Position numbers and translations under genes: made by a program. The notes under the pieces are model-generated. The model did no database searches and was not told the DNA's origin. It was given only the letters and a program-made list of their open reading frames with translations. A stretch of 63,896 nucleotides of DNA, the filler included, from Octopus bimaculoides (lineage: Eukaryota): assembly GCF_001194135.2 (NCBI RefSeq). It is 6 parts of 5 records of this genome, joined end to end, with 100 filler letters (N's around TTAATTAATTAA, not from the genome) between each part and the next. Parts side by side here need not be neighbours in the genome. Positions count along the whole stretch, not along the records: positions 18,944 to 34,545 come from NC_069005.1; 5 more parts are not named here. One strand, 5' to 3'. Below are positions 13,260-60,495 of this stretch, one piece after another; position 1 is the stretch's first letter, and each line of letters begins with the position of its first letter.

Positions 13260-13600
13260 ATATACATCTGGAAAATCCTAGAAAAACTTTTTCCAAACTT
13301 TGTCATTGACACCTACACAAACGGTAAGACAGGATGCTGCAACATTGCCATCAGGATGTAGGACGAGATACTGTTTAGCTTCGCCTTCGAAGGTCTACAA
13401 CTCTTCAATATCCTTCCACAAAGCCCGACAGACTTGCATGGTGTGAATGTAGGATTTTTTCAAAACAAAACTCTATTTCCTTCTGTCAAGAGTTAGGGAT
13501 GAACCTACCTCTACTCAAGAGACACAGATGAGGGCAGCAAAATCAAATTCCCTCATCCACTAAATGTAACATATCAGCGGACCTTTAGTGAAAGTGTAGC
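13260..13600 (+). mobile_element. CR1/L2-type LINE (3' continuation)
   Basis: Resumes ATATACATCTGGAAAATCCTAGAA (IYIWKILE), rejoining the 5' piece in frame. Confidence 0.8.
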
Positions 13601-16600
13601 AAAGTAAACGGTGGTGCCCAGCATGGCACCACCGTTTACATATAATCACACCCATTTTTTTTTTCTATTAAGGGTAACTAACGGAATACATACATACATG
13701 ACAATTATAAAGCCCGCCAATTACATCAATCATTAATGAATTTATCAGAAACGATCGTACGCACTCCTGGTATGTTTCATGTTCAGAACATCGTTGTAAA
13801 TATATCACTCATCACTCCTTGTACAATATTCATCGCGCAAACCATCATCAATATAATAATTAATCAACAAAGAACTTTGCACATTTTATACGAGACCAAA
13901 GCTACGAATCAGCAACTAAAAAAGAAACAGTTACAAGATCCTCATTCATGGTGAGCTTTTTCCTGATCTTTGTTAAGTGAATGAATGAGACTCTACCGGT
14001 ATAGACGTTGCATTTTATGTTTTGGGAGTCGATTAAATATAGTTAGAAGAATCGAACATGTACGTAAATAAGGCAGAAGGAACCAGACAGGAGCGACAAG
14101 TTACGTTTACCCAATTTGCAAATAAATCATTTTGCCGAAGTGACTGCTAAGCTTAATTAAACTGAGTTAATTACCGTCTTATGGTATATTTTATGGACAT
14201 AGAACAGCCTACCTTAGTGTTTTTGTAAACATTCAGTGATTTCAAGCGTATAGTGTAAATAATATTTTATGAACCAATTAGGGAACCTGTGATTACGAAG
14301 ACTAATTACCGTTTTATAGTATATCTTATAAACATTAAAACAAAGGTTTAGAAGTTTTGCCGACGTTAGGGAATTCCAGCACGTAGTTTCAATGTCGTCC
14401 CGTTTTGTAAAGAAGATCGTTGTTTATGAACATATTCGACAATTTTATATCATTTGGGTAAATATGTACCGGTTAAATTCTAAATCTAATCTGATCGTAT
14501 TGCTTGTCCTAAAATTTGTAGAAATCGAGATTTATATCGCGCTAAAACCTTTAAATATCAAGACAGATACAGAAATACCTGTCGGTAATTAATGCTTTGA
14601 ATAGGTAAATGAGTTAAGTGTGTTTCTAAGAATAGGACAAAAGTGATTTGAATTTCGAAATCATTGAACAGTATTATAGCAAAAAAAAAAAAAATTGTTT
14701 TCTATCTTTAATTCAAATCAGTCGATCCATGATGATGCTGATTTGATATTATTTCCCATCTTCGTCACAAATCAATCACATAGGGTGATGTCGAACAATA
14801 ATCTTTTATGACAAGAATATGGAAGTTCCAGGTGATCTTTGATTATAGCGTACCACCTTCCTTGTCACACGAGTTTGTTGGTATCAGGTTATTGGTGACC
14901 GTGAAAAAAAATTTTCAACGTAGATGTCGTGCTGAAGGTGTGTTTACGTCCCCGTAACGTTCGCTGTTCGGTAAAAGAGGCTGATAGAATGAATACTAGA
15001 TTTAAGAAATAAGTCCTTAAGGCGGTGCTCGAGCATGGCCCCCAACCAAATGACTGAAACAGGTAAAAGAATAAAAGACTATCTTGCCGTTGAGAAATAT
15101 TACCTTGCATGGAAATAGGTGAGGGTTAGAACAGGAAAGACGTCCAGTCATAGAAAATTTACCTCAACAAATTTTACCTATGCTNNNNNNNNNNNNNNNN
15201 NNNNNNNNNNNNNNNNNNNNNNNNNNNNNNNNNNNNNNNNNNNNNNNNNNNNNNNNNNNNNNNNNNNNNNNNNNNNNNNNNNNNNNNNNNNNNNNNNNNN
15301 NNNNNNNNNNNNNNNNNNNNNNNNNNNNNNNNNNNNNNNNNNNNNNNNNNNNNNNNNNNNNNNNNNNNNNNNNNNNNNNNNNNNNNNNNNNNNNNNNNNN
15401 NNNNNNNNNNNNNNNNNNNNNNNNNNNNNNNNNNNNNNNNNNNNNNNNNNNNNNNNNNNNNNNNNNNNNNNNNNNNNNNNNNNNNNNNNNNNNNNNNNNN
15501 NNNNNNNNNNNNNNNNNNNNNNNNNNNNNNNNNNNNNNNNNNNNNNNNNNNNNNNNNNNNNNNNNNNNNNNNNNNNNNNNNNNNNNNNNNNNNNNNNNNN
15601 NNNNNNNNNNNNNNNNNNNNNNNNNNNNNNNNNNNNNNNNNNNNNNNNNNNNNNNNNNNNNNNNNNNNNNNNNNNNNNNNNNNNNNNNNNNNNNNNNNNN
15701 NNNNNNNNNNNNNNNNNNNNNNNNNNNNNNNNNNNNNNNNNNNNNNNNNNNNNNNNNNNNNNNNNNNNNNNNNNNNNNNNNNNNNNNNNNNNNNNNNNNN
15801 NNNNNNNNNNNNNNNNNNNNNNNNNNNNNNNNNNNNNNNNNNNNNNNNNNNNNNNNNNNNNNNNNNNNNGCACCAGAAGAGAAAAGAAAAATTAAAAATG
15901 AAATTAAAAAATAAAAATGAAGTATTCTATACAAATATTCTTCCTTTTAACTTTTACATTTTCTGTGTTTTTTTCAGTTGCTTTTACACTTATTTTGGCA
16001 GTATTTATTGGCTTGTGACATTTCTTGTAGTTCTTCATATTTCCTGGGTTCAAATCCGACCAAGGCTTCTTTCTGTTTCAGTCTACCAAATCCACTCACA
16101 AGGCTTTGATCGGCCCGAGGCTATAGTAGAAGACACTTGTCCCAGGTGCCATGCAGTGGGACTGAATCCTTAACCATGTGGTTGGGAAGCAATCTTCTTA
16201 CCACACAGCCACACCTGTGCCTAGAGTAATATATAAAAACTTGTTCATTTCTAATAAGAGGGATTTTTTCAACATTTCCAATTTCCTTGAATTTTGATGT
16301 ACAGCTCTAAACTTTTATCTTCTCCACCATATCAAGGAACACAAATTTCTTCTGGAAATTGATATTTTAACCACAATCGATGCCAGGACTGGTTGTCAAA
16401 TGATGTTGATGGGAGACAAACACAGACACATACATATATATATATATACGACGGGCTTCTTTCAGTTTCCATCTACCAAATCCACTCAAGGCTTTGGTCA
16501 GCCCAAGGATATAGTAGAAAACACTTGTCCAAGGTGCCATGCAGTGAGACTGAACCCAGAACCATGTGGTTGGTAAGCAAGCTACTTATATATATATATA

Positions 16601-18943: not shown

Positions 18944-19310
18944 CTTGGCAGAATTTGAATGCAGAATGTAAACACACATGAAATTCCACAATGCATTTTG
19001 TCTGGTGTGCTAACATTCCTGCCAGCTTGCTATGTTAAGTACAATGAAAATAAGATTTTAGTCTTAAAAAATTATAGTAATCATCTACAAAAAAAAAAAG
19101 AAAAAACTAAATAAATAAAGGATATGAGTACAAACAGTATAGTAAGCAAACCCATACACACACACACACACAGTTGCAAATGCACATGTGGATAAGGATA
19201 CATGCCATAGAATGAGAGAATGGATGAAACAGAACAGGAGGAGTCGCATGGGACGGAGAGTTGCTGAAGAGGTTATAGGATGTTTAATAAAAGATTTCAG
19301 ATGAAGAACA

Positions 19311-19336
19311 CTAAAATTCGAATAATAATAATAATG
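19311..19336 (-). CDS. candidate terminal coding exon of the multi-EGF gene
   Basis: tttgttctttacttcag|CA TTA TTA TTA TTA TTC GAA TTT TAG gives (A)LLLLFEF* after a 97-bp intron. An alternative acceptor at 19311-19313 gives (V)FFI*. Confidence 0.35.
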
Positions 19337-19433
19337 CTGAAGTAAAGAACAAATGTATGGTGTATGTGTTTGACAAAAAAGAATAAAATGACCATCCTAA
19401 AATATAATTATAATCACTTATTGTTATGCCTAC

Positions 19434-19571
19434 CTGTTTGACAGTTTTTACCATCATAACCAGGGGAACATCCGCCACTTGAGCACACACCTGTCTGATG
19501 GTTACATAAGCTGTTATTTGCACAGTGGCAGAGGTTTTGACAGTTTGGGCCAAATTTAGATCCGGTACAAA
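19434..19571 (-). CDS. multi-EGF gene, EGF exon 13
   Basis: 138 bp, cag|..|gtaggc; VCTGSKFGPNCQNLCHCANNSLCNHQTGVCSSGGCSPGYDGKNCQT. Confidence 0.92.
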
Positions 19572-21693
19572 CTGTAAAAAAAACAAAAAACAAAAAAAAA
19601 ACACGTAAGACAATGATTTGAGAATTTATTTATTTTTTTTATTTTTATTTTTTTGCTTTTATCTAAAAATATAATTTCAGAACTAAAGATGTAAAACAGG
19701 AAATATACAGCTAACGTTAAAACATCTGATTGGTAAATACAAAATAATAAATGAGTAAACAATCCAAAGTCTTGGGACAATAAAAACAAAAATGAATAAT
19801 TAATCAGAACATACCGGACATCCTGACAAAACAGAAAATAACTAATTGGAATGAAAAGATATTAAGAAAACGTCCAACCCATGCTAGCATGGAAAGCGGA
19901 CGTTAAACGATGATGATGATGATGATATGACACTTTAATGGGTGGTTTGTCTTTTTAGTCGCAGTTTATAAGGAATAAATAATGGTTTTGGAAAAAAAAA
20001 AAAAAAAAAATTCAGTCACTGATTCACATCAGTTCTTTTCTCAGGCCGCGTGTCANNNNNNNNNNNNNNNNNNNNNNNNNNNNNNNNNNNNNNNNNNNNN
20101 NNNNNNNNNNNNNNNNNNNNNNNNNNNNNNNNNNNNNNNNNNNNNNNNNNNNNNNNNNNNNNNNNNNNNNNNNNNNNNNNNNNNNNNNNNNNNNNNNNNN
20201 NNNNNNNNNNNNNNNNNNNNNNNNNNNNNNNNNNNNNNNNNNNNNNNNNNNNNNNNNNNNNNNNNNNNNNNNNNNNNNNNNNNNNNNNNNNNNNNNNNNN
20301 NNNNNNNNNNNNNNNNNNNNNNNNNNNNNNNNNNNNNNNNNNNNNNNNNNNNNNNNNNNNNNNNNNNNNNNNNNCAGTAAACACACACACACACACATAA
20401 ATATCTGTAAAAGTCTAAATTTACACATACGTTTATATGTGTAAATTCACTAAATATGTGTGGTGTGTGTATATATCTATATATATATATATATATAATA
20501 ATAATAATATAAATAATAAATAGATATATGCATATATCCATACATATATGTACAAACCTAAATCTATATGTATACATACATGCATATATGGGTACAGGAC
20601 ATAAAAAAAAAAAAACGTTAAACACAATGAGAAATGAAAACATAAAAATGCAAACAGAAAACGAACTTTTTCCGAATAACGAAAAATAACAGAGAAACGA
20701 GACATTCAACATAAAGAGTATATCCCTTCGTCAGTTGTTCCTGTTCCATCTACCCTTCATTGGCCTGAAGAGTAGCTTGCACTCTATCCCTTGTTTGGAT
20801 GATTACTACTTCCGAGGTTTCATTAGGTACTTAAGTTGAAGCACCAAGTCAGTCCGGTATTATCTGCACAGCTTGAAGTAAGGTGAATTAAATCAAAATG
20901 CAGCTTATTTTGATTGTATATATATCTCTATATATATATACATATATATATATATACTCTTACTCTTTACTTGTTTCAGTCATTTGACTGCAGCCATGCT
21001 TGAGCATCAGCTTTTAGTTGAGCAAATTGACCCCCGGGACTTATTCTTTGTAAGCCTAGTACTTATTCTATTGGTCTCTTTTTGGCGAACTGCTAAGTTA
21101 CGAGGATGTAAACACACCAGCATAGGTTGTCAAGCGATGTCGGGGGGGGGGGGACAAACACAGACACACACATATATATATATACATATATGACGGGCTT
21201 CTTTCAGTTTCCGTCTCCCAAATCCACTCACAAGGCTTTGGTCAGGTATTAATGCAATATGGCTGTTTGATTATTTGATTAAATGGAACCACCTGAAATG
21301 GCTGTATTGCATTAATATGAATGTTTAATAATTGAATGCTGGGAGTTAAAATCACCATTTTTTTCCCAACATTTGTCTATTTATTAGTTAAGTCTCATAT
21401 AAAATAATCTTTTGTTTTAATCTTGGAATTAGATGGTTTTGATTTACTATCAGGTCACTTTAGTCAACTGTTTATATTTATATACTTCCACCAAATTCAC
21501 TCACAAGCTCATGCCTTGTGAATGAAGTGCCTACGGGAGAAGCTACTCACCCAAAATACACCGGCACCATAATTAAACCTATGGTCTTGAATGATAATCC
21601 ATCATCTTAGTGTGAGTTTTTATGCGGTTAGCTAATCAAACATCCATCAGTGAGGTAATTAATACAACATGAAAGATATACAGTGTCACCGAC

Positions 21694-21831
21694 CTGTTTG
21701 ACAGTTGTTGCCTTCATATCCAGCGGCACATCCTCCACTGGAGCAAACACCAGTCTCACGGCTACATCTGCTGTTGTTTGCACAATGACATGTGCTGTGG
21801 CAGTTTGGTCCGAATTTACCAGTTACACATG
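21694..21831 (-). CDS. multi-EGF gene, EGF exon 12
   Basis: 138 bp, cag|..|gtcggt; ACVTGKFGPNCHSTCHCANNSRCSRETGVCSSGGCAAGYEGNNCQT. Confidence 0.92.
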
Positions 21832-22164
21832 CTGTAGAGTAGAACATGAGCCAGTGATAATTACAATGAAATCGTAAACTACAGATGATATATTGTATGT
21901 ATTCACACACACACACACACAAACGCATACATACACACACATATATGTATGTATGTATCTAGAAAAGCATACGCAGTCAGATGGAATCTGTGCTGGCCGT
22001 TATTCATCAACTTAGCAGTAAACTCGATCGTCAGGTGTTTGGCTGATGTCATCACAGTTTTGGCCCTTAAACACAACCGTTCTGTTTGCTGGGCCCAACC
22101 TGACTGGGGTTTGGCGCCTTCCCAGTCAGACTGTCTTGTTGACTGCTAATGCATATATTATATG

Positions 22165-22410
22165 TGTTGATGATGATGATGATGATGTGTGTTGCTAGTA
22201 CCTCCTGACTGGCCTTCGTGCCGGTGGCACGTAAAAGTACCCACTACACTCTTGGAGTGGTTGGCATTAGGAAGGGCATCCAGCTGTAGAAACTCTGCCA
22301 AATCAGATTGGAGCCTGGTGTAGCCATCTGGTCCACCAGTCCTCAGTCAAATCGTCCAACCCATGCTAGCATGGAAAGCAGACGTTAAACGATGATGATG
22401 ATGATTCATA
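22165..22410 (+). mobile_element. repeat with an RTE-like 3' tail (...GGAAAGCGGACGTTAAACGATGATGAT)
   Basis: The same family occurs at about 6150-6320, 19870-19925, 24540-24810, 25915-26030, 28050-28205 and 31295-31432. Confidence 0.7.
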
Positions 22411-22688
22411 TTACAACAATCTTAGTAATGGTCTAAAATTTTGACATGGGGTGGGGGGAACAGCATTTCTTCAGGGAAGTTGGAAGCTGGTTACATCAAC
22501 CCCAGTGTATGACCAGTACTTATTTTATCAATCCAGAAAGAATGAAAGGCAAAGTAGACCATTATACAATTTGAATTCAGAACTTAATGATGGATGAAAT
22601 GCCACTAAGCAATTCTGCCAGCTTGCTACCTTCAACAATATCTCAATATACTATGTTAGCAAAACAGTAAATATGCTCAAACACTCAC

Positions 22689-22826
22689 CATTTTGACAGT
22701 TGCTGCCTTTGTAACCTGGAGCGCATCCTCCACTGGAACATGCTCCAGTCTGACGGTTACACTTGCTGCTGTCTGCGCAGTGGCATGTATTTTGACAGTT
22801 TGGTCCAAACGTATTTGTTGTGCACA
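22689..22826 (-). CDS. multi-EGF gene, EGF exon 11
   Basis: 138 bp, cag|..|gtgagt; VCTTNTFGPNCQNTCHCADSSKCNRQTGACSSGGCAPGYKGSNCQN. Confidence 0.92.
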
Positions 22827-23256
22827 CTGAAAGAGAGAAACAAAGTACGGCTTGGGATGATGCTGATGGAGAGAATCATGGGTAATGGTAGAAGTGGTCA
22901 CAAGGTGATCATAATGGTTGGTGGTGATGGTAGTTGTGGTGGCTGAGATGGTGAGGATGGTATGGATTAATAATCCCATTATACATATGTTTTTCTCCTT
23001 GTTTTCTCCGTATTCTTTCTGTTGAAGAGCGTAGCTCGAAACGTTAAAGACTTTCCGTATTCCCGAGCGTCATACTAATACATCCTTTTGTTGTTTACAC
23101 CACCTGTCCTCGTCTGTTGTTTTTTCGTACATTCTCCCTCCTATATATATATACACATACATATATATATATATATCTATATACATACATTTACATATAC
23201 ACATACGTATATATACATATATACATACATACACATATATACATGCATATATATGC

Positions 23257-23311
<55 letters not shown>

Positions 23312-23495
23312 GACATATATACATATACAAACATACATACATGCTGTACTCTTCCACCACAACTTTCTCTCACTCTTTCTTCCTGTTTCTGTTGTACCTG
23401 TAATTCAAAGGACCAGCCTTGTTACACTGTGTCACGTTGAATATCCCCTTGTGAAGCTCAATGAATATTTACAAAGTCCTGTTGTTTTCACTAAC

Positions 23496-23633
23496 CTTTT
23501 CGACAGTCATTGCCTTCATAACCTGGGGCACATCCTCCACTAGTGCATGCACCTGTCTGTGTGTGACACTTGCTGTTATCTTTACAGTGACATGTACTTT
23601 GACAGTTTGGTCCAAATTTACCTTTCACACATG
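23496..23633 (-). CDS. multi-EGF gene, EGF exon 10
   Basis: 138 bp, cag|..|gttagt; ACVKGKFGPNCQSTCHCKDNSKCHTQTGACTSGGCAPGYEGNDCRK. Confidence 0.92.
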
Positions 23634-23871
23634 CTGAAAGAGAATCACAAGACAATGGCAATTGCTTATGACAGAGTGATAGGCATTACTTATTCTCCAA
23701 ACTCAGCAAGTAAAGGAAAAAACAATAAATCAATGCTCTCCTTAAAAAGCTACCACCATGACATATTAAAATGATATCTACTTTGTTATAAAGAAACATT
23801 GCCAAAACAGTCCTAACCTTACCATATTGCCTCATACTGTATACATAATACAATAATGTCATAAAATTGTT

Positions 23872-24260
23872 AAGGCAGGGAGTTAGTGGAATTGTTAGCA
23901 CATTGAGCAAAATGCTTAGCGACCTTTCACCCATCTTTACATTCTGAGTTCAAATTCCACAAAGGTTAACTTTACCTTAAGGCAGCGAGCTGGCAGAGCT
24001 GTTAGCATCCTGGGAAAAATGCTTAGTAGCATTTTGTCTGTCTTTATGTTCCGAGTTCAAATTGTGTTGAAGTTGACTTTACCTTAAGGTACCAAGCTGA
24101 CAGAATCATTAGCATGCTGGGCAAAATACTTAGTGGCATTTTGTCTGTATAAGTTATGAGTTCAAATTCCACCAAGGTCAACTTTGCCTTTCATCTTTTT
24201 GAGGTCAATAAAATAAGCAGCAGTTGGACATGGATCAATGTGATGGACTTAGGCCTTCCC
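23872..24260 (+). mobile_element. three tandem ~107-bp SINE heads (family C, OK-SINE-like)
   Basis: Units start at 23872, 23979 and 24086 (AAGGC...CTGAGTTCAAATTCC...ACTTTACCTT). Only the last continues into the SINE body. Confidence 0.7.
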
Positions 24261-24320
24261 CAGAAATTACTGGCCTTGTGCTGAAATTTGAAACCGATAC
24301 CATAAAGTGGTTACATTTAC

Positions 24321-24458
24321 CTGTTTGACAGTTGCTACCCTTATAACCTGCAGCACATCCTCCACTTGAACACACACCTGTCTGACGGTTGCACTTCTTG
24401 TTGTCAGCACAATGACATGTATTTTGACAGTTCGGTCCAAATTCATTTCCACTACAAA
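24321..24458 (-). CDS. multi-EGF gene, EGF exon 9
   Basis: 138 bp, cag|..|gtaaat; VCSGNEFGPNCQNTCHCADNKKCNRQTGVCSSGGCAAGYKGSNCQT. Confidence 0.92.
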
Positions 24459-25368
24459 CTGTAGAAAAGAAAGAAAAAGAATTAATTTGAATACTTTGTT
24501 AAAAATAATTCTAAACATGGACAAAAAATATGAATTAAAGTACCATTTAAATGTGGTCGATGCCAGTGCCCCCCCAACTGGCTCCTGTGCTGGTGGTACA
24601 TAAAAAGCACCATCCAAACATGATCGATGCCAATGCCACCGACTGGCTCTTGTGCTAGTGGCATGTAAAAAGCATCCATTACACTCGGAGTAGTTGGTGT
24701 TAGGAAGGGCATCCAACTGTAGAAACATTGCCAGATCAGATTTGAGCCTGGTGCAGCCTACTAGCTTGCCAGTCCTCAGTCAAACTGTCCGACCCATGCC
24801 AGCATGGAAAAAGCCTGAAACTATCTGGAGAGGGCGGTAATCAGTTACATCGACCCCTGTGCTTGAAAGAGAAAGGCAGCATTGGAAAGATTATAACTCA
24901 GAACATTAAAGACCAGCTTCCAAGAATTTGTTTAATATGTAAAACTTGATAAGCACTCAAGTTCATAATGATTACACAGTTAAACACTATGCCACTGATT
25001 GAAATACAACATATATATGTTACCATGAAAATTGCAATTTCTTCACAACCATTGGAGCATGAAGCACTCCTCATGAATGCATGTTTGTGAGATGGTTGTG
25101 ATCTGTAAACAGTTTTGATTATGAACTGGAAAGAGAAGTATGAACATGCAGTGTGCATGTGCACACTGAATTCGCAAAACAGAAAAGAATAAAAATGCAA
25201 TGTGCATGTCAAAATAAAATGGAAGAAAAGAATAAAACAAGTTATACAATGGTCTGCGTTCTACGTCTGACACCACTATCATGCAGCTTTGCTGCAATTT
25301 TCTCATTGTAACTAGCTGTCAATCTAAAGCTGTAGTAAATAATATGAGAAGCATATCACACCACCAAC

Positions 25369-25506
25369 CTATTTGACAGTTGCTACCGTCATAACCAGCA
25401 GCACATCCTCCAGTAGAACACACACCACTCTGATAGTTACACTTGCTCTGGTCAGCACAATGACATGTCTGCTGACAGTTTTTACCAAATTTACCATTTT
25501 TACAAG
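25369..25506 (-). CDS. multi-EGF gene, EGF exon 8
   Basis: 138 bp, cag|..|gttggt; ACKNGKFGKNCQQTCHCADQSKCNYQSGVCSTGGCAAGYDGSNCQI. Confidence 0.9.
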   Translation of the reverse strand, partial: LVKMVNLVKTVSRHVIVLTRASVTIRVVCVLLEDVLLVMTVATVK

Positions 25507-26894
25507 CTGCCAGAATAAAGGAAAAAAAGATTCCAAAATATTAGTCGACAAACAAATTCAGAGTAATCTGAGTACAAAAGGATTAAAGACATAAGAAGTT
25601 TTATATTATTTCTTTCCAGTTATTTTCTTTCAGATTAAAGAGATGAGCCGATGGAATTATTAGCATGTTGCGCAAAATGCTTGCAGCATTTCATTTGTCT
25701 ATATGTTCTGAATTAACCCTTTAGCATTCAAATTTCTTCGTTAAATGTATTGCCTGTTTATTCACATTGTTTTGAATTAACCCTGCATTATCTTGTAGCT
25801 TCAAGATTTCAATGGTGTGTTGGTATATTTTTCGAATGACCTTGTAGGGTAGGTGTGAGAGGTTGGATACAGTCAGTTTCAACATAAAACAGGTAGAATA
25901 TTTGGGCTGGATATCATCATCATCATCGTTTAACGTCCGCCTTCCATGCTAGCATGGGTTGGACGATTTGACTGAGGACTGGTGAAACCGGATGGAAACA
26001 CCAGGCTCCAATCTAATTTGGCAGTAAATGCTTAAGAGTTTAATATAAGTTGAAAAACAAATTCAGTACTAAAAGCAAACACCCTATGAATAATGATGAT
26101 ACAAGATATTATTATTAAAAAAAAAATAATCATAAAGTGGCCAGCAAGCTGAACCAATATAGATAAATATACATAAAAATTTAGGAAATAAAAAATATAT
26201 ACCAGCTATGCTAGAAAAAGAATCAACTCTCCAAAGCCTCATATTTCTCCCTATAAAAAAAACATGCATGGTTAATCTAGTGAATATAAGAAACAATACC
26301 CCTTGCCTTTTTTTTTCCTCAGTATTTTTTCTTATATTCGCTACATTAACCATTTGTGTCTTGTTTATAGTGAGAAATATGTGGTTTTGGAGAGTTGACT
26401 ATTCTTTCTAGCATAGCTGGTATATATTTTTTACATCCTAAATTTATATATATATATATATATATATACATATATATATGTATGTATGTATGTATGTATA
26501 TATGCACATATATATACATGTAAGTATACTTGCATATGTGTATGTACATGTGCATGTTACTGTCTCCTTGCCTTGATTTCATGTGATGGCTGTAAGTGAA
26601 CATCACCGTCACACAAATGAAGTCCTGCATTTTCAGTCTTTTCCAAGGACAACATGTCTGGTCTTGGTTGCTTGGACAAAGGTGAAAGTTGGTGACAGGA
26701 AGGGCATCCACACGCAGAAAGAAAATCCGCCTCAACAAAATCTATTCAACCCATGCAAACATAAAAATGCAGATGATGATCATCATCATCGACGATGATA
26801 AACCTTTTACTAGTTGACATTTGCCTCGGTCAAGTACAATTGTACACACAAACTAAGGATAGTATCAATGAAATATACCAAGTACAACACTTAC

Positions 26895-27032
26895 CTGTTT
26901 GGCAGTTGTTACCTTCATAACCAGCAGCACATCCACCACTGGAACAAACTCCAGTGTAACGATTACACTTGCTCTTGTCAGCACACTGACATGTACTTTT
27001 GCAGTTTGGTCCAAATTTACCAGGTATGCATG
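26895..27032 (-). CDS. multi-EGF gene, EGF exon 7
   Basis: 138 bp, tag|..|gtaagt; ACIPGKFGPNCKSTCQCADKSKCNRYTGVCSSGGCAAGYEGNNCQT. Confidence 0.92.
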
Positions 27033-27367
27033 CTATAAGTAGAGAACAACATTATTATTATTTCATATACGCACAACAGATTAGACTGCTGAAAAAAATC
27101 CCTAACATAAGGCTACAACAAGTAACCCTAGATACCAAGAACCACCCTAAGTACCTTAACTTATCATTATTATTATTATTATTATTAAGGTGAAAGTACA
27201 TGGCTCAGTGGTTAGAGCGTCGAGCTTACGATCATGAGGTTGCGAGTTCGAATCCCGGACCAGGCTGCGTGTTGTGCTCTTGAGCAAGACACTTTATTTC
27301 ATGTTGCTCCAGTTCACTCAGCTGTAGAAATGAGTTGTAATGTCACTGGTGCCAAGCTGTATCGGCC

Positions 27368-27399
<32 letters not shown>

Positions 27400-27430
27400 N
27401 NNNNNNNNNTGGTGCCAAGCTGTATCGGCC

Positions 27431-27498
<68 letters not shown>

Positions 27499-27714
27499 AA
27501 CTACTTAGAGCTATTAATTTTTGGTTGTATGTTTCTGTGTGTGTGTTTCTGTATGTCCTTCAACATATAGACAATGTGACACAGATTTTAAAAAAGGACT
27601 TAACTTTGAACAAATTATGAATCTAAGTGTCTATGATTAACAAATATTTTCATTGGCAGTATAGCAGTAGGTAACAACCTTGTATTTATATAAAAGACAT
27701 GCTATGATACTTAC

Positions 27715-27852
27715 CTGTTTGACATTTGCTGCCTTCATAACCAGCAGCACATCCACCACTGGAACAAACACCTGTCTGACGGTTACACTTGCTGTTGTCA
27801 GCACAGTGGCAGGTATTTTTACAGTTCGGTCCAAATTTAGAGCCACTGCAAA
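27715..27852 (-). CDS. multi-EGF gene, EGF exon 6
   Basis: 138 bp, tag|..|gtaagt; VCSGSKFGPNCKNTCHCADNSKCNRQTGVCSSGGCAAGYEGSKCQT. Confidence 0.92.
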
Positions 27853-29110
27853 CTACAAGAGATGAAAGGAAAAATTTGGGGTTGATAATTTGTGGAAAAT
27901 AGCTTTAACCCCTTAGCATTTAAACTGGATATACCCGGCCCAAATATTCAACATTTTATGTTTAAACTTGTCAAATCCAGCCTCTGACACGTACCATACA
28001 ATGTCATTCTAGAAATAATCAGATTATTGAAATCTTGAAGCTACGATACATCATCATCATCGTTTAACGTCCGCTTTCCATGCTAGCATGGGTTGGACGA
28101 TTTGATTGAGGACTGGTGAAACCGGATGGCAAAACCAGGCTCCAATCTAATTTGGCAGAGTTTCTACAGCTGGATGCCCTTCCTAATGCCAACCACTCAG
28201 AGATACAATACATGATTAATTTTAAATGATGTGCATAAATAAGCATTACATTTGACAGAATAATCAAAATGCTACAGCGTTAAAGGAAAAAAAAAATCAA
28301 CAAAATAATTTAATAGTATGATTGCAGTTCTTTATGTCCAATGATCATGAAGATAGATAACACCTACATGTATGAGAGGGTGGTGAAAAGTTCCTGGCTT
28401 CGGGTAGAAAAAAATACAGAAAGATCATTTAATTATGATTTTATTCAACATGTTTCCCTCTCAGATTCACACACTTATTGCAGTGGTCTTTCAGTTTTTC
28501 TAAGCCCTGTAAAAGAACTCAGAAGAAGTTTGGGCCTCCAAACAGGCCTTTCGTGATATCCTTAAAGCCAGGAACTTTTTAGCACTCCCATGTAGAGTTG
28601 ACACTCCGACTGCCAGTACATCAAGTACCTGTTGCGTTTATCTCTTCTCCATCACTGTAGGGCTTTGCTTCCTGCCAGCACTTAATATTTTTGAAGTGAG
28701 AATCAGTCTGTCAATCCAGTCTTACTCTTAAACTGTAGGTTTTACAATGGAGTGGCCTTCTCCTAGGCAAATTGCTTTACAGGGCTGGAGAGTTCCATTT
28801 AACCTGGAGTTGCTAGAAGGATGTTAAAGAGGATACCAGACCATCTGAGGGACTTCACTCCTTGATATGCTGTCAAGGTTGGCTCACCTTGACAGTAAGT
28901 CCTGGGGTTGATTTGATCAACTAAAACCCTTCAAAGTGGTGCCCCAGCATGGTCACAATTATATGACAGACAAGTAAAAGAAAAGAAAGATATTTTCAAA
29001 ATTAATTGAAACCAAAACAGTGTATTATAATTAAAATATAATGACAAGAGTGTTAATACATCCTCACTTGGTGTAAATACTGTGTGTGTAAGCCTTGCTA
29101 CATCACTTAC

Positions 29111-29248
29111 CTGTTTGACAGTTGCTACCTTCATAACCTGCAGCACATCCTCCACTGGAACACACACCTGTCTGGGTGTGGCACTTCTTGTTGTCAGCAC
29201 AGTGACACACACTTTGACAGTTTGGTCCAAATTTACCTTTAACACATG
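29111..29248 (-). CDS. multi-EGF gene, EGF exon 5
   Basis: 138 bp, cag|..|gtaagt; ACVKGKFGPNCQSVCHCADNKKCHTQTGVCSSGGCAAGYEGSNCQT. Confidence 0.92.
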
Positions 29249-29669
29249 CTGTAACGTAATTAGAAATTATATATTCTTAAAAATCACTGAAGTGGTATAG
29301 GTATCAATAAATAAATACACACATACATGCAAGACTTTTTTCAAGTTCCAAGTGTGAATCTGTCTGTGTTAACTACATCCCAAAGATGAAGCCTTGTGTC
29401 TTTATAGGAAACCGGCTACCTCCTCAGTGGAAGATTTATAACACTTACAAAAATAGAAGAGACACACATACCTACACACAAACGTGAGGGCCCTGGGATA
29501 TGTAACACACTGCCTAGATATACCGATTTTGAGAAATTAGGCTTCTCAAAACCAGAAAGGAGAAAGCTAATTTGAAGACTACAAATCCAATCCATCGCTG
29601 GAAGTGGAAAAATCTGTAAAATTTTCTAGAAGTTTATCATTTAAATATGTGCGAGCATGTCTAGATATG

Positions 29670-30017
29670 CAGGAGTCGGAGTCAGAGTCATGGAATCAGA
29701 AACAATTAAGAGGTAGCTGGAGTCAGAGTCAGTAAAACGAAACCGACTCCGACTCACAATATCTTTATACTTTAATATAAGCTAGTTATAAAATATAGGC
29801 CTATTCAAAGTACAAGCGCATGCATATGTTTTATGAGATATGCCGAGTACAATCACTAAATTACATAAAGAGGAGTCAGAGTCGGAAGTGCCAGTAGTAG
29901 AGGAGTCAGAGTCGGAAATGCCAGTAGTAGAGTAGTCGGAGTCAGAGTCGGAAATGCCAGTAGTAGAGGAGTCAGAGTCAGAGTCAAAGTTTTTTTGTTT
30001 CGACTCCCACAGCCCTG
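29670..30017. mobile_element. non-autonomous DNA element with GGAGTC/AGAGTC subterminal repeats
   Basis: Right end CGACTCCCACAGCCCTG, with internal 27-33 bp repeats. No clear TSD. Confidence 0.55.
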
Positions 30018-30927
30018 CTAAAAGCAAACAGCGGTATCTTTGAAGTCTCAAAACTTCCACAATAATGCATAATTTATGCAAAGCAGTATGAATAAATAAG
30101 CATTACATTTGACAGAATAATTTGAATGTTAAAAGGTTATGTGACCCTGGTTACTACAAAAACCTCTCCCACTTTGTTCATGCGTGGGGGGTTTTCTTTC
30201 TGTGCATATGAAGAGGGAATGTGTTCGTAGCAGTTGGATTCGTTTAATATTAACATATCTTAATGTTTCTATCGTTCTCTCTGTCTCTCTTTGCTTACGT
30301 GCAAGAATGTTTCTTTTTAAGTAGGTGAGGAAATGGAAAACGTTTATTTCAGTTGGGTAAAGTGTAATGGCTCTCGCTCTCTCTTTCACTGTCTGCCTGT
30401 ATCTGTTTGTCTCTGCTTCTCCATCTGTCTTTCTGCCTCTCTCACATTTTATCTCTCCCTCTCTCGTTCTATCTCTCCTTCTCATTCTATCTATCTCTCT
30501 CACTCTCTCCACACTCGTATTCTCTCTTCCCCTCTCCCTCTCTTATTCTCTTTCCCTCTCTCATTCTATATCTCCCTCCCCTTCTCTGCTTATATGTGTG
30601 AGTATATTGCTTTTTATGTGCTTAAGGAGAGAGAAAGTGTTTATTTCAATTGGGTACAATTGATAAATCGTAACCTCTCTCTCTTTCTCTCTCACTGTCT
30701 ACCAGTGTCTCTGCTTCTCTCTCTCTGTCTTTTTCCCTCTCTCTCTATCATTTTATCTTTCACTCTCTCCCTTTCTCTGTTTATGTAAGTAAATTTCCCT
30801 TTATGTATGTAAGGAGAAGAAAAATGCTTATTTGATTCAGTTAAGAATTTGTAATCTCTCTCTCTCTCTCTATCTAAAGCTTCCTGTGTGTGTATGCTTT
30901 CGCTGGTGAATGAACGAGTCCACTTAC

Positions 30928-31065
30928 CTGTTTGACAGTTGCTACCTTCATAACCTGCAGCACATCCACCAATGGTACATACACCACTTTGACGGTTACA
31001 TTTGCTCTTGTCAGCACAGTGACATGTATGTTGACAATTTGGTCCAAATTTATCATTTGTACATA
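30928..31065 (-). CDS. multi-EGF gene, EGF exon 4
   Basis: 138 bp, cag|..|gtaagt; VCTNDKFGPNCQHTCHCADKSKCNRQSGVCTIGGCAAGYEGSNCQT. Confidence 0.92.
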
Positions 31066-31260
31066 CTGTGAAACAAGACAAAAATATGTGTTTGAGAACA
31101 CAGAAAATTATATCAAATTCTAAAATTATACAAAATAACTATAAGACTGTATGGTAAGAAACTTCCATCTGAACCAAGTGGTCTTACATTCAGTCCCACT
31201 GCAAGACACCTTGTGAGTGGATTTGGTCAACAGAAACTGAATGAAGCTTGCCATTCACAT

Positions 31261-31294
<34 letters not shown>

Positions 31295-31562
31295 CATCAT
31301 CATCATTTAACGTCCGTTTTCCATGCTGGCATGGGTTGGACAGTTTGACTGGGGACTGGCAAGCCAGGAGGCTGCACCAGGCTCCAATCTGATCTGGCAG
31401 AGTTTCTACAGCTGGATGCCCTTCCTAATGCTCGTTCATATATGATATAATCCGCTACTGTAAGAATAATGTCTCACTTTGCTCACACTATATAGCAATG
31501 TTATGCCATCCATACTACTGTAATATTTCACAATGAAAGGTCCATAAAGAGGATACACTCAC

Positions 31563-31700
31563 CTGCTTGACAACTGTTACCGCCAAAACCTGCAGCACAT
31601 CCTCCACTGGAGCAAACACCTGTTTGACGGTTACACTTCTTATTGTCAACACAATGGCATGTACTTTGACAGTTTGGTCCAAATTTAGATACACTACAAA
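31563..31700 (-). CDS. multi-EGF gene, EGF exon 3
   Basis: 138 bp, tag|..|gtgagt; VCSVSKFGPNCQSTCHCVDNKKCNRQTGVCSSGGCAAGFGGNSCQA. Confidence 0.92.
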
Positions 31701-32357
31701 CTACAAGAAATTAAACGACAGTAGTTTTAGCATGCATTTTATAGAGATATGGCTTAAATAGCGGAAAATAAATGAAATATATATATGAACCCTTTATTAT
31801 TCAGATTATTCTATCAAATATAATGCTTAATTATTCACATCGTTTTGAATTAATCATACATTATCCTGTAGCTTTGAGATTTAAATGATACAATTGTTTA
31901 TTATTAGAATAACATTGTAGGGTAGGTATGAGAGGTCAGGTCTGGCTGGTTTTATCATAAAACAAGTAGGATATTTAGGCTGGCTATGGCTGGTTTAAAT
32001 TCTAAAGGGTTAAAGGTTAACAACAAGGGAGCAAGCAAACAACATACAAAAAATATTATTAAGATATGTGATAATAGTAATTTCAGTTTGGGAGTGAAAA
32101 TAGTTTAAGTAATAATATCAAGCCTGTATGATATTTGTTAGCTTCAGAGAGGTGGAAGCATGGCTGTATGGTGAGAAGTTTGTTTCCCCCACCACATGGT
32201 CATGGGTTCAGTCCCACTGAGTGGCACCTTGGACAAGTGTCAGCTACTATAGCCTTAGGCTGATCAAAGACATGTGAGTAGATTTGGCAGATTGGAATTA
32301 AAGAAAGACCATTCTCAATCACATGGTTCCATGCCAACCACTTTACAGAGTATAATG

Positions 32358-32703
32358 GGTGCTTTTACGTGGCACCAGCATGGGGGAGTCTTTTACATGG
32401 CACCAGCACGAGTGCTTTCACGTGGTGCTATTATGTGGCACTGGCATGGGGGAGTCTTTTACATGGCACCAGCACAGGTGCTTTCCNNNNNNNNNNCACA
32501 GGTGCTTTCACGTGGTGCTATTATGTGGCACTGGCATGGGGGAGTCTTTTACATGGCACCAGCACAGGTGCTTTCACGTGGTGCTATTATGTGGCACTGG
32601 CATGGGGGAGTCTTTTACATGGCACCAGCACAGGTGCTTTCCTGTGGTGCAATTATGTGGCACCAGCACGGCAAGCTTGTTGTGGTGCCAGCACAGGTGC
32701 TTG
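32358..32703. repeat. 66-bp minisatellite (VNTR) in the intron after EGF exon 2
   Basis: At least 3 essentially identical units (TTTCACGTGGTGCTATTATGTGGCACTGGCATGGGGGAGTCTTTTACATGGCACCAGCACAGGTGC) plus partials, with an N gap inside. Confidence 0.9.
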
Positions 32704-32743
32704 ATGTTACTAATAGATATGTAAAACATACTACATCACTTAC

Positions 32744-32881
32744 CTGTCTGACAGTTGTTACCTTCATAACCTGCAGCACATCCTCCACTTGAACACACAC
32801 CAGTCTGACGGTTACACTTGTTCTTGTCAGCACAATGACAGGTATTTTTACAGTTTGGCCCAAATTTACCAATTACGCATG
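32744..32881 (-). CDS. multi-EGF gene, EGF exon 2
   Basis: 138 bp, cag|..|gtaagt; ACVIGKFGPNCKNTCHCADKNKCNRQTGVCSSGGCAAGYEGNNCQT. Confidence 0.92.
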
Positions 32882-33070
32882 CTGTAAGAAAAATACATAT
32901 TAATCATTAAAATAAATAATGCTATCAATTTGAACTAAACATATAAGCCTATGTGGAGGTGCAATGGCCCAGTGGTTAGGGCAGCGAACTTGTGCCAAAA
33001 TTTAAATCATTATTATTATTATTTGCAAAATGTAACAGGTCTTAAAAGACACAACGATGTACTATAATAC

Positions 33071-33163
33071 CTGTCATAATTCAATTATCCATAATTTGAT
33101 ATAATAATATTTCAGAATATTAAAGGATATTATATCAGATTATGGATAATTAAATTATGACAG
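33071..33163. repeat. short hairpin (36-bp arms)
   Basis: CTGTCATAATTCAATTATCCATAATTTGATATAATA pairs with 33128-33163 (2 mismatches). Confidence 0.85.
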
Positions 33164-34015
33164 TTATATTTTACAAACAATACACAATGCTTCAAGCGAA
33201 CTACAATACTCTCCTATTATTATTATTGAAGGTGCATGGCTCAGTGGTTAGAGCGTCGAGCTTACGATTGTGAGATTCTGAGCTCGATTCCCAGACTGGA
33301 CTGTGTGTTGTGTTCTTGAGCAAGACACTTTATTTCACTTTGTTCCAGTTAACTCAGCTGTAGAAATCACTGGTGCCAAGCTGTATTGGCCCCTTTGCCT
33401 TTCCCTTGGAATACATCAGCGGTGTGGAGAGGGGAGGCTGGTATGCATGGGTGACTGCTGGCCTTCCATAAAACAACCTTGCCCGAACTTGTGCCTTGAA
33501 GGTTAACTTTGTAGGTGCAATCCCATGGTTATTCATGACCGAAGGCAGGGAGGTCTCCATTATTATTATTACGGCAGTGAGCTGGCAGAATTGTTAGCAT
33601 GACTGGCAAAATGCTTTGTGGCATCTCATCTGTCCTTACATTCTGAGTTCATATTCAGTTGAGGTTCACTTTGCCTTTCATCCTTTCGGGGTCGATTAAA
33701 TAAGTACCAGCTGAATACTGGCGTTGAAGTAATCAACATAAATGCTCCTTCAAACACCAGGCAAAATGCTTTGCAGCATTTTGTCTATCTTTATGTTTTG
33801 AGTTCAAATACCACTGAGGTTAACTTTGCCTTTCATTCTTTCGGGGTCGATAAAATAAGTACCAGTTGAGCACTGGGGTCAATGTAATTGACTTAACACT
33901 CCCCAAAACTGCTGATCTTGTGCCAAAATTCGAAACAAGTAAAATAGTAAAAGAGAAAGAGATGTAGAATTAACGAAATTAATTGTAAACACTCAATAAC
34001 GTATATTCCACTTAC

Positions 34016-34153
34016 CTGTTTGACAGTTGTTACCTCCATAACCTGCAGCACATCCTCCACTGGAACACACACCTGTCTGATGGTCACACTTGCTGTTGTC
34101 TGCACAGTGGCATGTACTTTTGCAGTTTGGCCCAAATTTATCTTTTATACATG
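34016..34153 (-). CDS. multi-EGF gene, EGF exon 1 (first visible)
   Basis: 138 bp, cag|..|gtaagt; ACIKDKFGPNCKSTCHCADNSKCDHQTGVCSSGGCAAGYGGNNCQT. Confidence 0.92.
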
Positions 34154-34545
34154 CTGTAACAAAAATACGAAATGAGCTATGAATTAATACAAAAATATGA
34201 AGCATACTAAGAATTAATGCAATAATATGAAATATATAAATCATTGTATTTAATTTATAGCATAACTCAAATAAAAATAATTATATGTATATAAATATAT
34301 ATATATATATATATGTGCTGTGCGTGAGAAGAACCGGCAAGCCAAGTAAGATCGTTGCCAGTGCCCCTGGACTGGTTCTTGTGCGGGTGGCACATGAGAT
34401 GCACCATTTTGAGCGTGGCCGTTGCCAGTACCGCCTGACTGGCTCCTGTAGGATTTTCGAGCGAGATCGTTGCCAGCGCCCCTGGACTGGCTTGTGCGGG
34501 TGGCACATAAGACACCATTTCGAGCGTGGCCGTTTTCGTGCGGGT

Positions 34546-60395: not shown

Positions 60396-60495
60396 NNNNN
60401 NNNNNNNNNNNNNNNNNNNNNNNNNNNNNNNNNNNNNNNTTAATTAATTAANNNNNNNNNNNNNNNNNNNNNNNNNNNNNNNNNNNNNNNNNNNN
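60396..60495. other. artificial scaffold join
   Basis: N44-TTAATTAATTAA-N44. Confidence 0.9.

What the first reader, a model, noticed from the sequence alone, without database searches (positions are those of the whole stretch)
19434..34153. Gene built from 13 consecutive identical-length (138 bp) symmetric EGF exons
Seen: 13 minus-strand exons, each exactly 138 bp, all phase 1-1, all with AG/GT boundaries and no stops. Each encodes C-x4-FG(P)NC-x3-C-x-C-x5-C-x6-C-x4-C-x2-G(Y/F)-x-G-x2-C, for 598 aa and 104 Cys in total. Introns are 0.5-2.1 kb and full of TEs. Known: this is the 8-Cys laminin-type EGF repeat of MEGF10/Draper/SCARF receptors, a family expanded in molluscs. Inference: this is a young, lineage-specific exon-amplified member, far more homogeneous than MEGF10 repeats (shared SSGGCAAG core). 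It could be a rod-like extracellular recognition, adhesion or matrix protein. The ORF track hides it because each unit appears only as a short ORF. A 319-N gap at 20056-20374 could conceal a 14th unit.
Basis: partly seen in the sequence, partly recalled or inferred. Interest (0 to 1): 0.8.

Follow-up and report, generated by a model that had tools for sequence, protein, structure and literature searches.

The report
Octopus gene's 13-exon EGF repeat array
This is a real stretch of an octopus-type gene in which 13 successive 138-bp exons each encode one small 8-cysteine EGF-like module. The same exon design occurs in chiton and amphioxus receptor genes, so it is an ordinary, apparently unannotated, member of a known family.

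Summary
On the minus strand there are exactly 13 exons of 138 bp. All have AG/GT boundaries and polypyrimidine tracts, all are phase 1-1, and none has a stop. Spliced, they give 598 codons and 104 Cys. No further or decayed unit lies in the readable DNA. All three N gaps are intronic.

- **Domain type.** Pfam calls the unit EGF_STAB1-2 (PF24887), not Laminin_EGF. The best solved relative is the Tie2 EGF region. The unit has a 4-residue C6-C7 loop where canonical EGF has C-x-C.
- **Age.** The array is not young. Units are 69-86% identical in DNA, with dS about 0.85 and dN/dS about 0.2. Similarity falls to background within 20-30 nt of the exon edges. Introns share only transposon fragments.
- **Uniqueness.** A chiton receptor tyrosine phosphatase gene has 15 consecutive 138-bp phase 1-1 exons with identical Cys spacing. 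Amphioxus genes use 141-bp exons with the intron at the same position, and octopus paralogues use 129/135-bp exons.

Intron repeats match Octopus loci. No close orthologue was found in an exhaustive protein search.

It is most likely the extracellular EGF stalk of a larger type-I receptor whose ends lie outside the piece. It is a new member of a known kind, of low interest.

The parts
34016..34153 (-). EGF exon 1 (138 bp, phase 1-1): CIKDKFGPNCKSTCHCADNSKCDHQTGVCSSGGCAAGYGGNNCQT
   Evidence: It has an acceptor, so at least one coding exon lies upstream, beyond the piece.
32744..32881 (-). EGF exon 2 (138 bp, phase 1-1)
31563..31700 (-). EGF exon 3 (138 bp, phase 1-1)
30928..31065 (-). EGF exon 4 (138 bp, phase 1-1)
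29111..29248 (-). EGF exon 5 (138 bp, phase 1-1)
27715..27852 (-). EGF exon 6 (138 bp, phase 1-1)
26895..27032 (-). EGF exon 7 (138 bp, phase 1-1)
25369..25506 (-). EGF exon 8 (138 bp, phase 1-1; FGKNC variant, donor GTTGGT)
24321..24458 (-). EGF exon 9 (138 bp, phase 1-1)
23496..23633 (-). EGF exon 10 (138 bp, phase 1-1; one of the more divergent units)
22689..22826 (-). EGF exon 11 (138 bp, phase 1-1; one of the more divergent units)
21694..21831 (-). EGF exon 12 (138 bp, phase 1-1)
19434..19571 (-). EGF exon 13 (138 bp, phase 1-1; the most divergent unit). Its GT donor shows that the gene continues downstream of the piece.
20056..20374 (.). 319-N assembly gap inside intron 12 (19572-21693). 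A hidden 14th unit can be neither shown nor excluded.
27400..27409 (.). 10-N gap inside intron 6. The 53 nt on its left are repeated directly after it, which indicates an unmerged overlap in a (TA)n(TG)n microsatellite.
32487..32496 (.). 10-N gap inside intron 2, within a 66-bp tandem repeat (32355-32663)
34154..34545 (-). 3' part of the intron upstream of exon 1. No coding similarity; contains AT-rich and microsatellite sequence.
18944..19433 (-). 5' part of the intron downstream of exon 13. No coding similarity.

Best explanation
The region is the middle of a larger protein-coding gene in an octopod-type genome. It encodes a rod of at least 13 tandem 46-residue, 8-cysteine EGF-like modules, one module per exon.

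Each exon begins two bases before the first Cys codon and ends one base into the next codon. Every exon is therefore a self-contained phase 1-1 cassette. By analogy with Tie2, each cassette holds all four of its disulfides: c1-c2, c3-c5, c4-c6 and c7-c8. Cassettes can be duplicated, lost or skipped without breaking the reading frame.

The array arose by exon duplication long ago and has been kept under purifying selection. Only residues 2-4 of the first small loop vary freely.

The most likely function is the stiff extracellular stalk, and possibly a ligand-binding surface, of a type-I membrane receptor of the mollusc EGF-array family. Annotated members of that family carry an F5/8-type-C (discoidin/fucolectin-like) head and often cytoplasmic tyrosine-phosphatase domains.

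**Shown here:** exon anatomy, intactness, selection, domain type, family-wide conservation of the exon design, and octopod origin.

**Inferred:** membrane-receptor architecture, phosphatase tail, stalk function, and expression.
For: - **Anatomy and intactness.** 13 exons of 138 bp with AG/GT, phase 1-1, 104 Cys and no stop. No decayed copies.
- **Selection.** Mean dN is 0.18, mean dS 0.85, ratio about 0.21. Differences per site are 0.14, 0.17 and 0.35 at codon positions 1, 2 and 3. All 8 Cys and 8 other residues are invariant, yet 15 of these 16 use two or more synonymous codons. pN is 0.6-0.7 at residues 2-4, against 0.03 for residues 6-10.
- **Old duplication.** Identity falls to background within 20-30 nt of the exon edges. 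Introns share only dispersed repeats, in varying positions and orientations.
- **Domain type.** PF24887 EGF_STAB1-2 scores 149 bits against a cut-off of 27, in 13 stretches. Tie2 EGF1-3 (2gy5) matches at E 4e-9.
- **Family and design.**
  - The chiton Liolophura XP_064596704.1 has 19 units followed by 2 PTP domains. It includes 15 consecutive 138-bp phase 1-1 exons of identical Cys spacing.
  - Octopus vulgaris RPTP-T-like (P0012: F5/8-C + EGF x6 + PTP) and O. sinensis 'draper' (P0085) are the closest cephalopod proteins, at 49-50% per unit. Their units are single phase-1 exons.
  - Amphioxus units (55-60% identical, same C-SSGG-C loop) are 141-bp exons with the intron at the same position.
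- **Origin.** There are 43 repeat matches (70-93% identity) to 137 kb of O. sinensis and O. bimaculoides loci. There are none to the amphioxus locus (19.5 kb) or the chiton locus (72 kb).
Against: - Nothing outside the EGF array is in the piece. tblastn with 8 full-length relatives hits only the 13 exons. Signal peptide, lectin head, transmembrane segment and phosphatase domain are therefore all unobserved.
- The same module occurs in other architectures: adhesion GPCR, Tie-like kinase and fibrinogen-domain proteins in amphioxus.
- No transcript or protein matching this gene was found in 1.84 billion representatives or in the word-indexed search. Expression is therefore unproven.
- The single-unit AlphaFold model was of low confidence (pLDDT 60.6) and gave no Foldseek match. 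The fold assignment rests on sequence only.
Confidence: 0.6

Rival explanations
1. The array belongs to a secreted structural or matrix protein: a disulfide-stiffened EGF rod with other terminal domains and no membrane anchor. This would be comparable in principle to octovafibrin, the octopus egg-tether protein.
For: - A long homogeneous EGF array with no other domain in 15.6 kb.
- An octopus precedent exists for a load-bearing tandem-EGF protein: octovafibrin, with 29 EGF repeats between C-type lectin domains (PMC10336842).
- The absence of an annotated orthologue would fit a tissue-restricted secreted product.
Against: - Octovafibrin repeats are canonical 6-Cys EGF, with Cys at positions 5, 10, 16, 25, 27 and 36. 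They are not this 8-Cys 46-residue unit.
- All the closest relatives with this unit for which ends are known are membrane proteins: RPTP, RTK, aGPCR, or discoidin-EGF-TM.
Confidence: 0.2
2. It is the octopus orthologue of the MEGF10/Draper/CED-1 engulfment receptor.
For: - NCBI names many mollusc hits MEGF10/MEGF11/draper-like.
- Vertebrate MEGF10/MEGF11/PEAR1 proteins appear among the hits.
- The unit has 8 Cys.
Against: - There is no Pfam hit to Laminin_EGF, EGF_PEAR1L or EMI; only EGF_STAB1-2 is found.
- The C6-x4-C7 loop replaces the C-x-C of MEGF10-type repeats (alignment).
- Vertebrate MEGF10/PEAR1 proteins are only 29-36% identical, against 48-60% for RPTP and amphioxus units.
- The octopus proteins named 'draper' carry discoidin heads rather than EMI domains.
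Confidence: 0.05
3. It is a non-functional remnant (pseudogene array) or an assembly artefact of a shorter repeat.
For: - No matching protein or transcript-derived sequence was found in the databases.
- The assembly is gappy, with unmerged overlaps.
Against: - All 13 units are open with all 104 Cys and intact splice sites. dN/dS is about 0.2 despite dS of about 0.85.
- Units differ by 14-31% in DNA and sit in unique, non-collinear introns. They are therefore not collapsed or duplicated assembly copies.
- The gaps are intronic.
Confidence: 0.08

Closest known systems
Chiton (Liolophura sinensis) receptor-type tyrosine phosphatase XP_064596704.1, named 'MEGF6' by NCBI (P0132, locus L004)
   Same: - The 46-residue unit has the same Cys spacing, including the 4-residue C6-C7 loop and the GCAAGY core.
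- It has one unit per exon, each exactly 138 bp, AG/GT, phase 1-1, with an Ala/Val junction codon.
- It has 15 such exons in a row, with introns of about 1.0-2.0 kb.
- Unit homogeneity is 77%, against 73% here.
   Different: - Only 48% (maximum 58%) identity to the window's units, so it is not a demonstrable orthologue.
- Its array shows a young two-unit periodicity (1295/1829-bp spacing).
- It has known TM and 2 PTP domains, which cannot be seen in the window.
Octopus discoidin-EGF receptors: O. vulgaris RPTP-T-like (P0012/P0027), O. sinensis 'protein draper' (P0085), O. bimaculoides MEGF10-like (P0087/P0088)
   Same: - They come from the same kind of genome.
- The unit is the same type of 8-Cys module, encoded by single phase-1 exons.
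- These are the closest cephalopod proteins found.
   Different: - They have only 5-8 units.
- Their exons are 129 or 135 bp and the C6-C7 loop is 3 residues.
- Identity to the window is 41-50%, and their arrays are less homogeneous (42-52%).
Amphioxus EGF arrays (for example B. belcheri KAI8487025.1 adhesion-GPCR-like with 22 units; P0004 fibrinogen-domain protein; P0003 Tie-like kinase)
   Same: - These units have the highest identity to the window (55-60%, up to 73%).
- They share the C-SSGG-C loop.
- They have one unit per exon, with the phase-1 intron at the same position.
   Different: - The units are 47 residues (141 bp) and carry GW instead of GY.
- Introns are about 100-130 bp and still alike between copies, which indicates truly young duplications.
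- The host architectures differ, and the phylum is different.
Tie2/TEK EGF repeats (PDB 2gy5, 4k0v)
   Same: This is the best solved-structure match (E 4e-9), over three consecutive units with the same 8-Cys register.
   Different: - Tie2 has C-x-C where this unit has C-x4-C.
- Tie2 has only three repeats, embedded between Ig domains.
- The structure-based check failed here because the model was of low confidence.
MEGF10 / Draper / CED-1 / PEAR1 and SCARF1
   Same: - They are multi-EGF type-I receptors with 8-Cys repeats.
- Pipelines give mollusc relatives these names.
- There are weak sequence hits.
   Different: - Identity is 29-36%.
- There are no Laminin_EGF, EGF_PEAR1L or EMI hits.
- SCARF1 matches only at E 2e-3 to 6e-3.
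Octovafibrin (O. bimaculoides XP_014771937.1; PMC10336842)
   Same: It is an octopus protein made of a long tandem EGF array that acts as a disulfide-stiffened rod.
   Different: - It has canonical 6-Cys EGF domains flanked by C-type lectin domains.
- It is a different unit and a different gene.

Membership tests
EGF_STAB1-2-type EGF repeat (Pfam PF24887) | Match to the Pfam profile above its gathering score | tested here: met
   149 bits against a cut-off of 27, E 4.5e-44, in 13 stretches
Laminin-type EGF (Pfam PF00053) | Match to the Laminin_EGF profile | tested here: not met
   No hit at E<=1
Laminin-type EGF (Pfam PF00053) | Eight cysteines per repeat | tested here: met
   8 invariant Cys in each of the 13 units
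Laminin-type EGF (Pfam PF00053) | Canonical C-x-C in the EGF core | tested here: not met
   C29-x4-C34 (SSGG loop) in all 13 units. It aligns to a 3-4-residue gap in Tie2.
MEGF10 / Draper / CED-1 | N-terminal EMI domain | not testable with these tools
   The 5' end of the gene lies outside the piece. No non-EGF exon is present in the piece.
MEGF10 / Draper / CED-1 | Transmembrane segment and tail with NPxY/YxxL motifs | not testable with these tools
   The 3' end of the gene lies outside the piece.
MEGF10 / Draper / CED-1 | Repeats of the MEGF10/PEAR1 type (Pfam EGF_PEAR1L / Laminin_EGF) and closest similarity to MEGF10 proteins | tested here: not met
   No such Pfam hit. Vertebrate MEGF10/MEGF11/PEAR1 are 29-36% identical, below RPTP and amphioxus units.
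Mollusc EGF-array receptor tyrosine phosphatases (chiton XP_064596704.1; octopus RPTP-T-like) | Tandem 8-Cys units, one per phase 1-1 exon (138 bp in the chiton) | tested here: met
   13 x 138 bp here. 15+3 x 138 bp in chiton L004, and 129/135 bp in O. sinensis L003.
Mollusc EGF-array receptor tyrosine phosphatases (chiton XP_064596704.1; octopus RPTP-T-like) | Cytoplasmic Y_phosphatase domain(s) after a TM segment | not testable with these tools
   These would lie outside the piece. tblastn with P0012, P0132, P0014 and P0087 finds no PTP exon in the piece.
Mollusc EGF-array receptor tyrosine phosphatases (chiton XP_064596704.1; octopus RPTP-T-like) | F5/8 type C (discoidin/fucolectin-like) head, present in the octopus members | not testable with these tools
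   It would lie outside the piece. No hit in the piece.
Tie-receptor EGF region | Sequence similarity to the solved Tie2 EGF1-3 | tested here: met
   2gy5_A at E 3.9e-9 over 135 residues
Tie-receptor EGF region | Fold match of a predicted model to Tie2 or laminin EGF structures | tested here: inconclusive
   The single-unit AF2 model had pLDDT 60.6. Foldseek against the PDB gave no match.
Octovafibrin | Canonical 6-Cys EGF repeats (Cys at 5, 10, 16, 25, 27, 36) flanked by C-type lectin domains | tested here: not met
   The units here have 8 Cys with different spacing (compared with PMC10336842).

The most novel reading that the evidence does not exclude
The gene is an unannotated, octopod-restricted receptor (or secreted protein) whose 13 or more frame-neutral cassette exons are alternatively included. 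This would give a repertoire of stalk lengths and combinations. The hypervariable residues 2-4 of each module would form a diversified recognition surface, making a small Dscam-like or immune-type diversity system.

**Not excluded by:** the symmetric phase 1-1 exons; pN/pS of about 1.3 at residues 2-5; differing EGF-cassette content between gene models of the O. vulgaris paralogue (P0012 and P0027); and the absence of any orthologue in the databases.

**Against it:** there is no conserved intronic selector or docking sequence, since identity is at background beyond about 30 nt from the exons. There are also no expression data.
Probability: 0.08. Interest if true: 0.55.

Novelty: new member of a known kind. 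Interest (0 to 1): 0.2.

Why it matters
If the gene is expressed, octopus annotations are missing a long-stalk member of the EGF-array receptor family. That would be a modest correction to gene catalogues.

The more general point is already textbook: a self-contained, disulfide-closed EGF module on a phase 1-1 exon can be duplicated and shuffled freely. What this case adds is how far that design is conserved. The module is 138 bp with identical Cys spacing in a chiton and an octopod, and 141 bp with the same intron position in amphioxus. There it serves phosphatase, kinase, GPCR and lectin-type receptors. This does not open a long-standing question.

Tried and rejected
1. **Spliced protein as input.** I used the alignment of the 13 single-exon translations instead.
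2. **Exact look-up of window ORFs.** Ten window ORFs spanning exons and introns were looked up to identify the source assembly. None is in the collection.
3. **Loci not on record.** Genomic loci for P0012, P0027 and P0014 are not on record. P0087, P0085, P0004 and P0132 worked.
4. **Structure.** The AlphaFold2 model of one unit had pLDDT 60.6, and Foldseek against the PDB returned nothing. This was uninformative.
5. **Non-coding RNA.** Rfam and tRNA scans of the piece gave only sub-threshold miRNA-like hits on microsatellites and no tRNA. The bacterial promoter/terminator scan is irrelevant for this eukaryotic locus.
6. **Higher-order repeat.** A period of 2 or 3 units is not significant: flat lag profile, lag-3 permutation p = 0.07.
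7. **Octovafibrin.** Considered because of the octopus tandem-EGF precedent. Rejected on Cys number and spacing.
8. **Amphioxus origin.** Considered because its units are the most similar. Rejected because the intron repeats match Octopus loci and not the amphioxus locus.
9. **Literature.** Searches for a described cephalopod expansion of this family found nothing specific.

Full report
**1. The observation**

The usable piece is 18944-34545 (15,602 nt, 37.6% G+C). It has N runs at 20056-20374, 27400-27409 and 32487-32496. A motif scan of the reverse strand finds 13 copies of F-G-x-N-C-x3-C-x-C. Reading outwards from each copy gives 13 exons of exactly 138 bp. Each is preceded by a pyrimidine tract and AG and followed by GT.

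Every exon starts with the last two bases of a codon and ends with the first base of the next, so all are phase 1-1. Joined, they give 1794 nt with no stop and 104 Cys. Introns are 497-2122 bp.

An nhmmer profile of the exons recovers the 13 exons at E 1e-38 to 1e-44 and nothing else. A permissive tblastn gives the same picture. There are no extra or decayed units in the readable DNA.

**2. The gaps**

All three gaps are intronic, so no reading frame depends on them.
- The 53 nt before the 27400 gap recur directly after it. This is an unmerged overlap in a microsatellite.
- The 32487 gap lies inside a 66-bp tandem repeat.
- The 319-N gap lies in the longest intron (intron 12). A complete 138-bp exon could fit there and would leave flanking introns of normal size. 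This cannot be settled here.

**3. Age and selection**

Units are 69-86% identical in DNA (mean 78%) and 60-87% in protein (mean 73%). Differences per site are 0.14, 0.17 and 0.35 at codon positions 1, 2 and 3. Nei-Gojobori estimates give mean dN 0.18, mean dS 0.85 and a ratio of about 0.21. The lowest pairwise dS is 0.26.

Column identity across the 13 copies is 0.7-0.9 inside the exon. It falls to the 0.26-0.30 background within 20-30 nt on either side. The introns share only dispersed repeat fragments, in different positions and orientations, plus microsatellites.

Sixteen residues are invariant, and 15 of them use two or more synonymous codons among the units. Residues 2-4 are nearly free to vary (pN 0.6-0.7), while the rest is constrained.

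The array is therefore old and maintained by purifying selection, not young. There is no significant higher-order period. Units 10-13 are the most divergent and units 1-2 the most alike, which hints that the array continues upstream of the piece.

**4. What the unit is**

Pfam assigns only EGF_STAB1-2 (PF24887, 149 bits, 13 stretches). It gives no Laminin_EGF, EGF_PEAR1L or EMI hit. Among solved structures the best match is the EGF region of Tie2 (2gy5, E 4e-9). SCARF1 is marginal.

In that alignment the SSGG loop between the sixth and seventh Cys faces a gap, because canonical repeats have C-x-C there. From my own knowledge of the Tie2 disulfide map, the pairs would be c1-c2, c3-c5, c4-c6 and c7-c8. 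All four would then close within one exon. This is an inference, not something tested here. A single-unit AlphaFold model was too uncertain to test the fold (pLDDT 60.6; no Foldseek match).

**5. Relatives**

*Word-indexed search.* It found no protein above 61% identity. The best scorers were bivalve 'MEGF10/draper-like' proteins with F5/8-type-C domains, several amphioxus proteins (57-61%), and an Octopus vulgaris receptor-type tyrosine phosphatase (49%; F5/8-C + EGF x6 + TM + PTP).

*Coverage of octopus proteomes.* A second search showed that O. vulgaris, O. sinensis and O. bimaculoides proteomes are in the database and contain discoidin-EGF paralogues.

*Exhaustive search.* An HMMER search with the 13-unit profile against 1.84 billion representatives found 1424 proteins.
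- The top hit was an amphioxus adhesion-GPCR-like protein with 22 units.
- The second was a chiton protein with 19 units followed by two PTP domains.
- Cephalopods appear only with 6-8-unit paralogues.

No annotated orthologue of this gene was found.

*Per-unit identity to the window.*

| Compared units | Identity to window units |
|---|---|
| Amphioxus | 55-60% |
| Chiton | 48% |
| Octopus and cuttlefish paralogues | 41-50% |
| Bivalves | 41-43% |

**6. The exon design is not special to this gene**

| Gene and locus | Exons per unit | Exon length | Notes |
|---|---|---|---|
| Chiton RPTP (L004) | one | 138 bp | 15 consecutive, plus 3 later; AG/GT, phase 1-1; same Cys spacing; same Ala/Val junction codon; introns about 1.0-2.0 kb |
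| Amphioxus (L001) | one | 141 bp | intron at the same position and phase; intron flanks immediately upstream of the exons near-identical between copies, so truly young copies |
| O. sinensis paralogue (L003) | one | 129 or 135 bp | phase-1 exons |

This is the classic behaviour of a class 1-1 module under exon duplication and shuffling, which is established knowledge. It explains why the unit turns up in phosphatase, kinase, GPCR, fibrinogen-domain and discoidin-domain proteins.

**7. Source organism**

About 3.0 kb of the piece's non-coding DNA matches interspersed repeats in two unrelated Octopus loci: 43 matches at 70-93% identity over 137 kb searched. There are no matches in the amphioxus locus (19.5 kb) or the chiton locus (72 kb). 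The piece therefore comes from an octopod-type genome. The species was not determined.

**8. Function**

Nothing but EGF exons is present in the piece. tblastn with eight full-length relatives hits only the 13 exons. Exon 1 has an acceptor and exon 13 a donor, so the gene extends both ways.

Every relative whose ends are known is a membrane protein, and the closest mollusc relatives are receptor tyrosine phosphatases or discoidin-EGF-TM proteins. The best reading is therefore the extracellular stalk of a type-I receptor, possibly an RPTP.

My estimates are:
- about 0.9 that this is a real, selected coding array of this family;
- about 0.6 that it is a membrane receptor;
- about 0.35 that it carries a phosphatase tail.

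The main rival is a secreted EGF rod. Octovafibrin shows that octopuses build such materials (PMC10336842), but it uses a different, 6-Cys unit. A true MEGF10/Draper orthologue, a pseudogene and an assembly artefact are all unlikely for the reasons given under the rival explanations.

**9. Verdict**

This is a new, apparently unannotated, member of a known kind, and interest is low.

Noticed in passing
window 32355-32663 (intron 2): A 66-bp tandem repeat of about 5 copies (90-100% identical) that spans the 10-N gap at 32487-32496. It creates long spurious plus-strand ORFs.
   Followed up: partly
window 33605-33888, 23934-24190, 22491-22628: A SINE-like element of about 155 nt, present twice in tandem in intron 1. 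Further copies lie in introns 9 and 11. It matches repeats in O. sinensis and O. bimaculoides loci (L003 around 60224-60397; L002 around 13572-13737).
   Followed up: partly
window 22186-22405, 24578-24810, 28049-28198, 31293-31431, 25913-26025, 19867-19926; also 20966-21243 and 32156-32305: At least two further interspersed repeat families are shared between introns, in both orientations, and with the Octopus loci (70-93% identity). None was classified.
   Followed up: partly
window 29869-29985 and 30430-30580 (intron 4): A 30/36-bp minisatellite and a CT-rich low-complexity stretch. They produce long Ser/Leu-rich pseudo-ORFs on both strands.
   Followed up: no
window 20520-20590, 23203-23284, 26456-26557, 27365-27467: Sub-threshold Rfam matches to mir-297, mir-466, mir-3149 and mir-1277 fall on (TA)n/(CA)n microsatellites. 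They score far below the gathering scores and are artefacts of simple sequence.
   Followed up: yes
window 27347-27462: The 53 nt before the 10-N gap are repeated directly after it, so the assembly carries an unmerged overlap. Intron 6 is really about 60 nt shorter than it reads.
   Followed up: yes
exon junctions, all 13 exons; L004 and L001: The split junction codon is always Ala (G|CA, G|CT) or Val (G|TT, G|TA, G|TG). The same Ala/Val junction is seen in the chiton and amphioxus arrays.
   Followed up: partly
L004 965-22931 (chiton Liolophura sinensis RPTP gene): The 15 consecutive 138-bp EGF exons show alternating spacing of about 1295 and about 1829 bp. This indicates recent duplication in two-unit blocks. 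The pipeline name for this protein ('MEGF6') hides two tyrosine-phosphatase domains.
   Followed up: partly
P0012 versus P0027 (O. vulgaris, same chromosome): Two gene models of the octopus RPTP paralogue contain different sets of EGF cassettes, and P0012 is 'isoform X8'. This is an annotation-level hint that symmetric EGF exons are alternatively included.
   Followed up: no
P0002 (Branchiostoma hybrid) and P0051 (Plakobranchus): Some database proteins fuse this EGF array to reverse-transcriptase or integrase domains. These are probably gene-model chimaeras with neighbouring retroelements.
   Followed up: no
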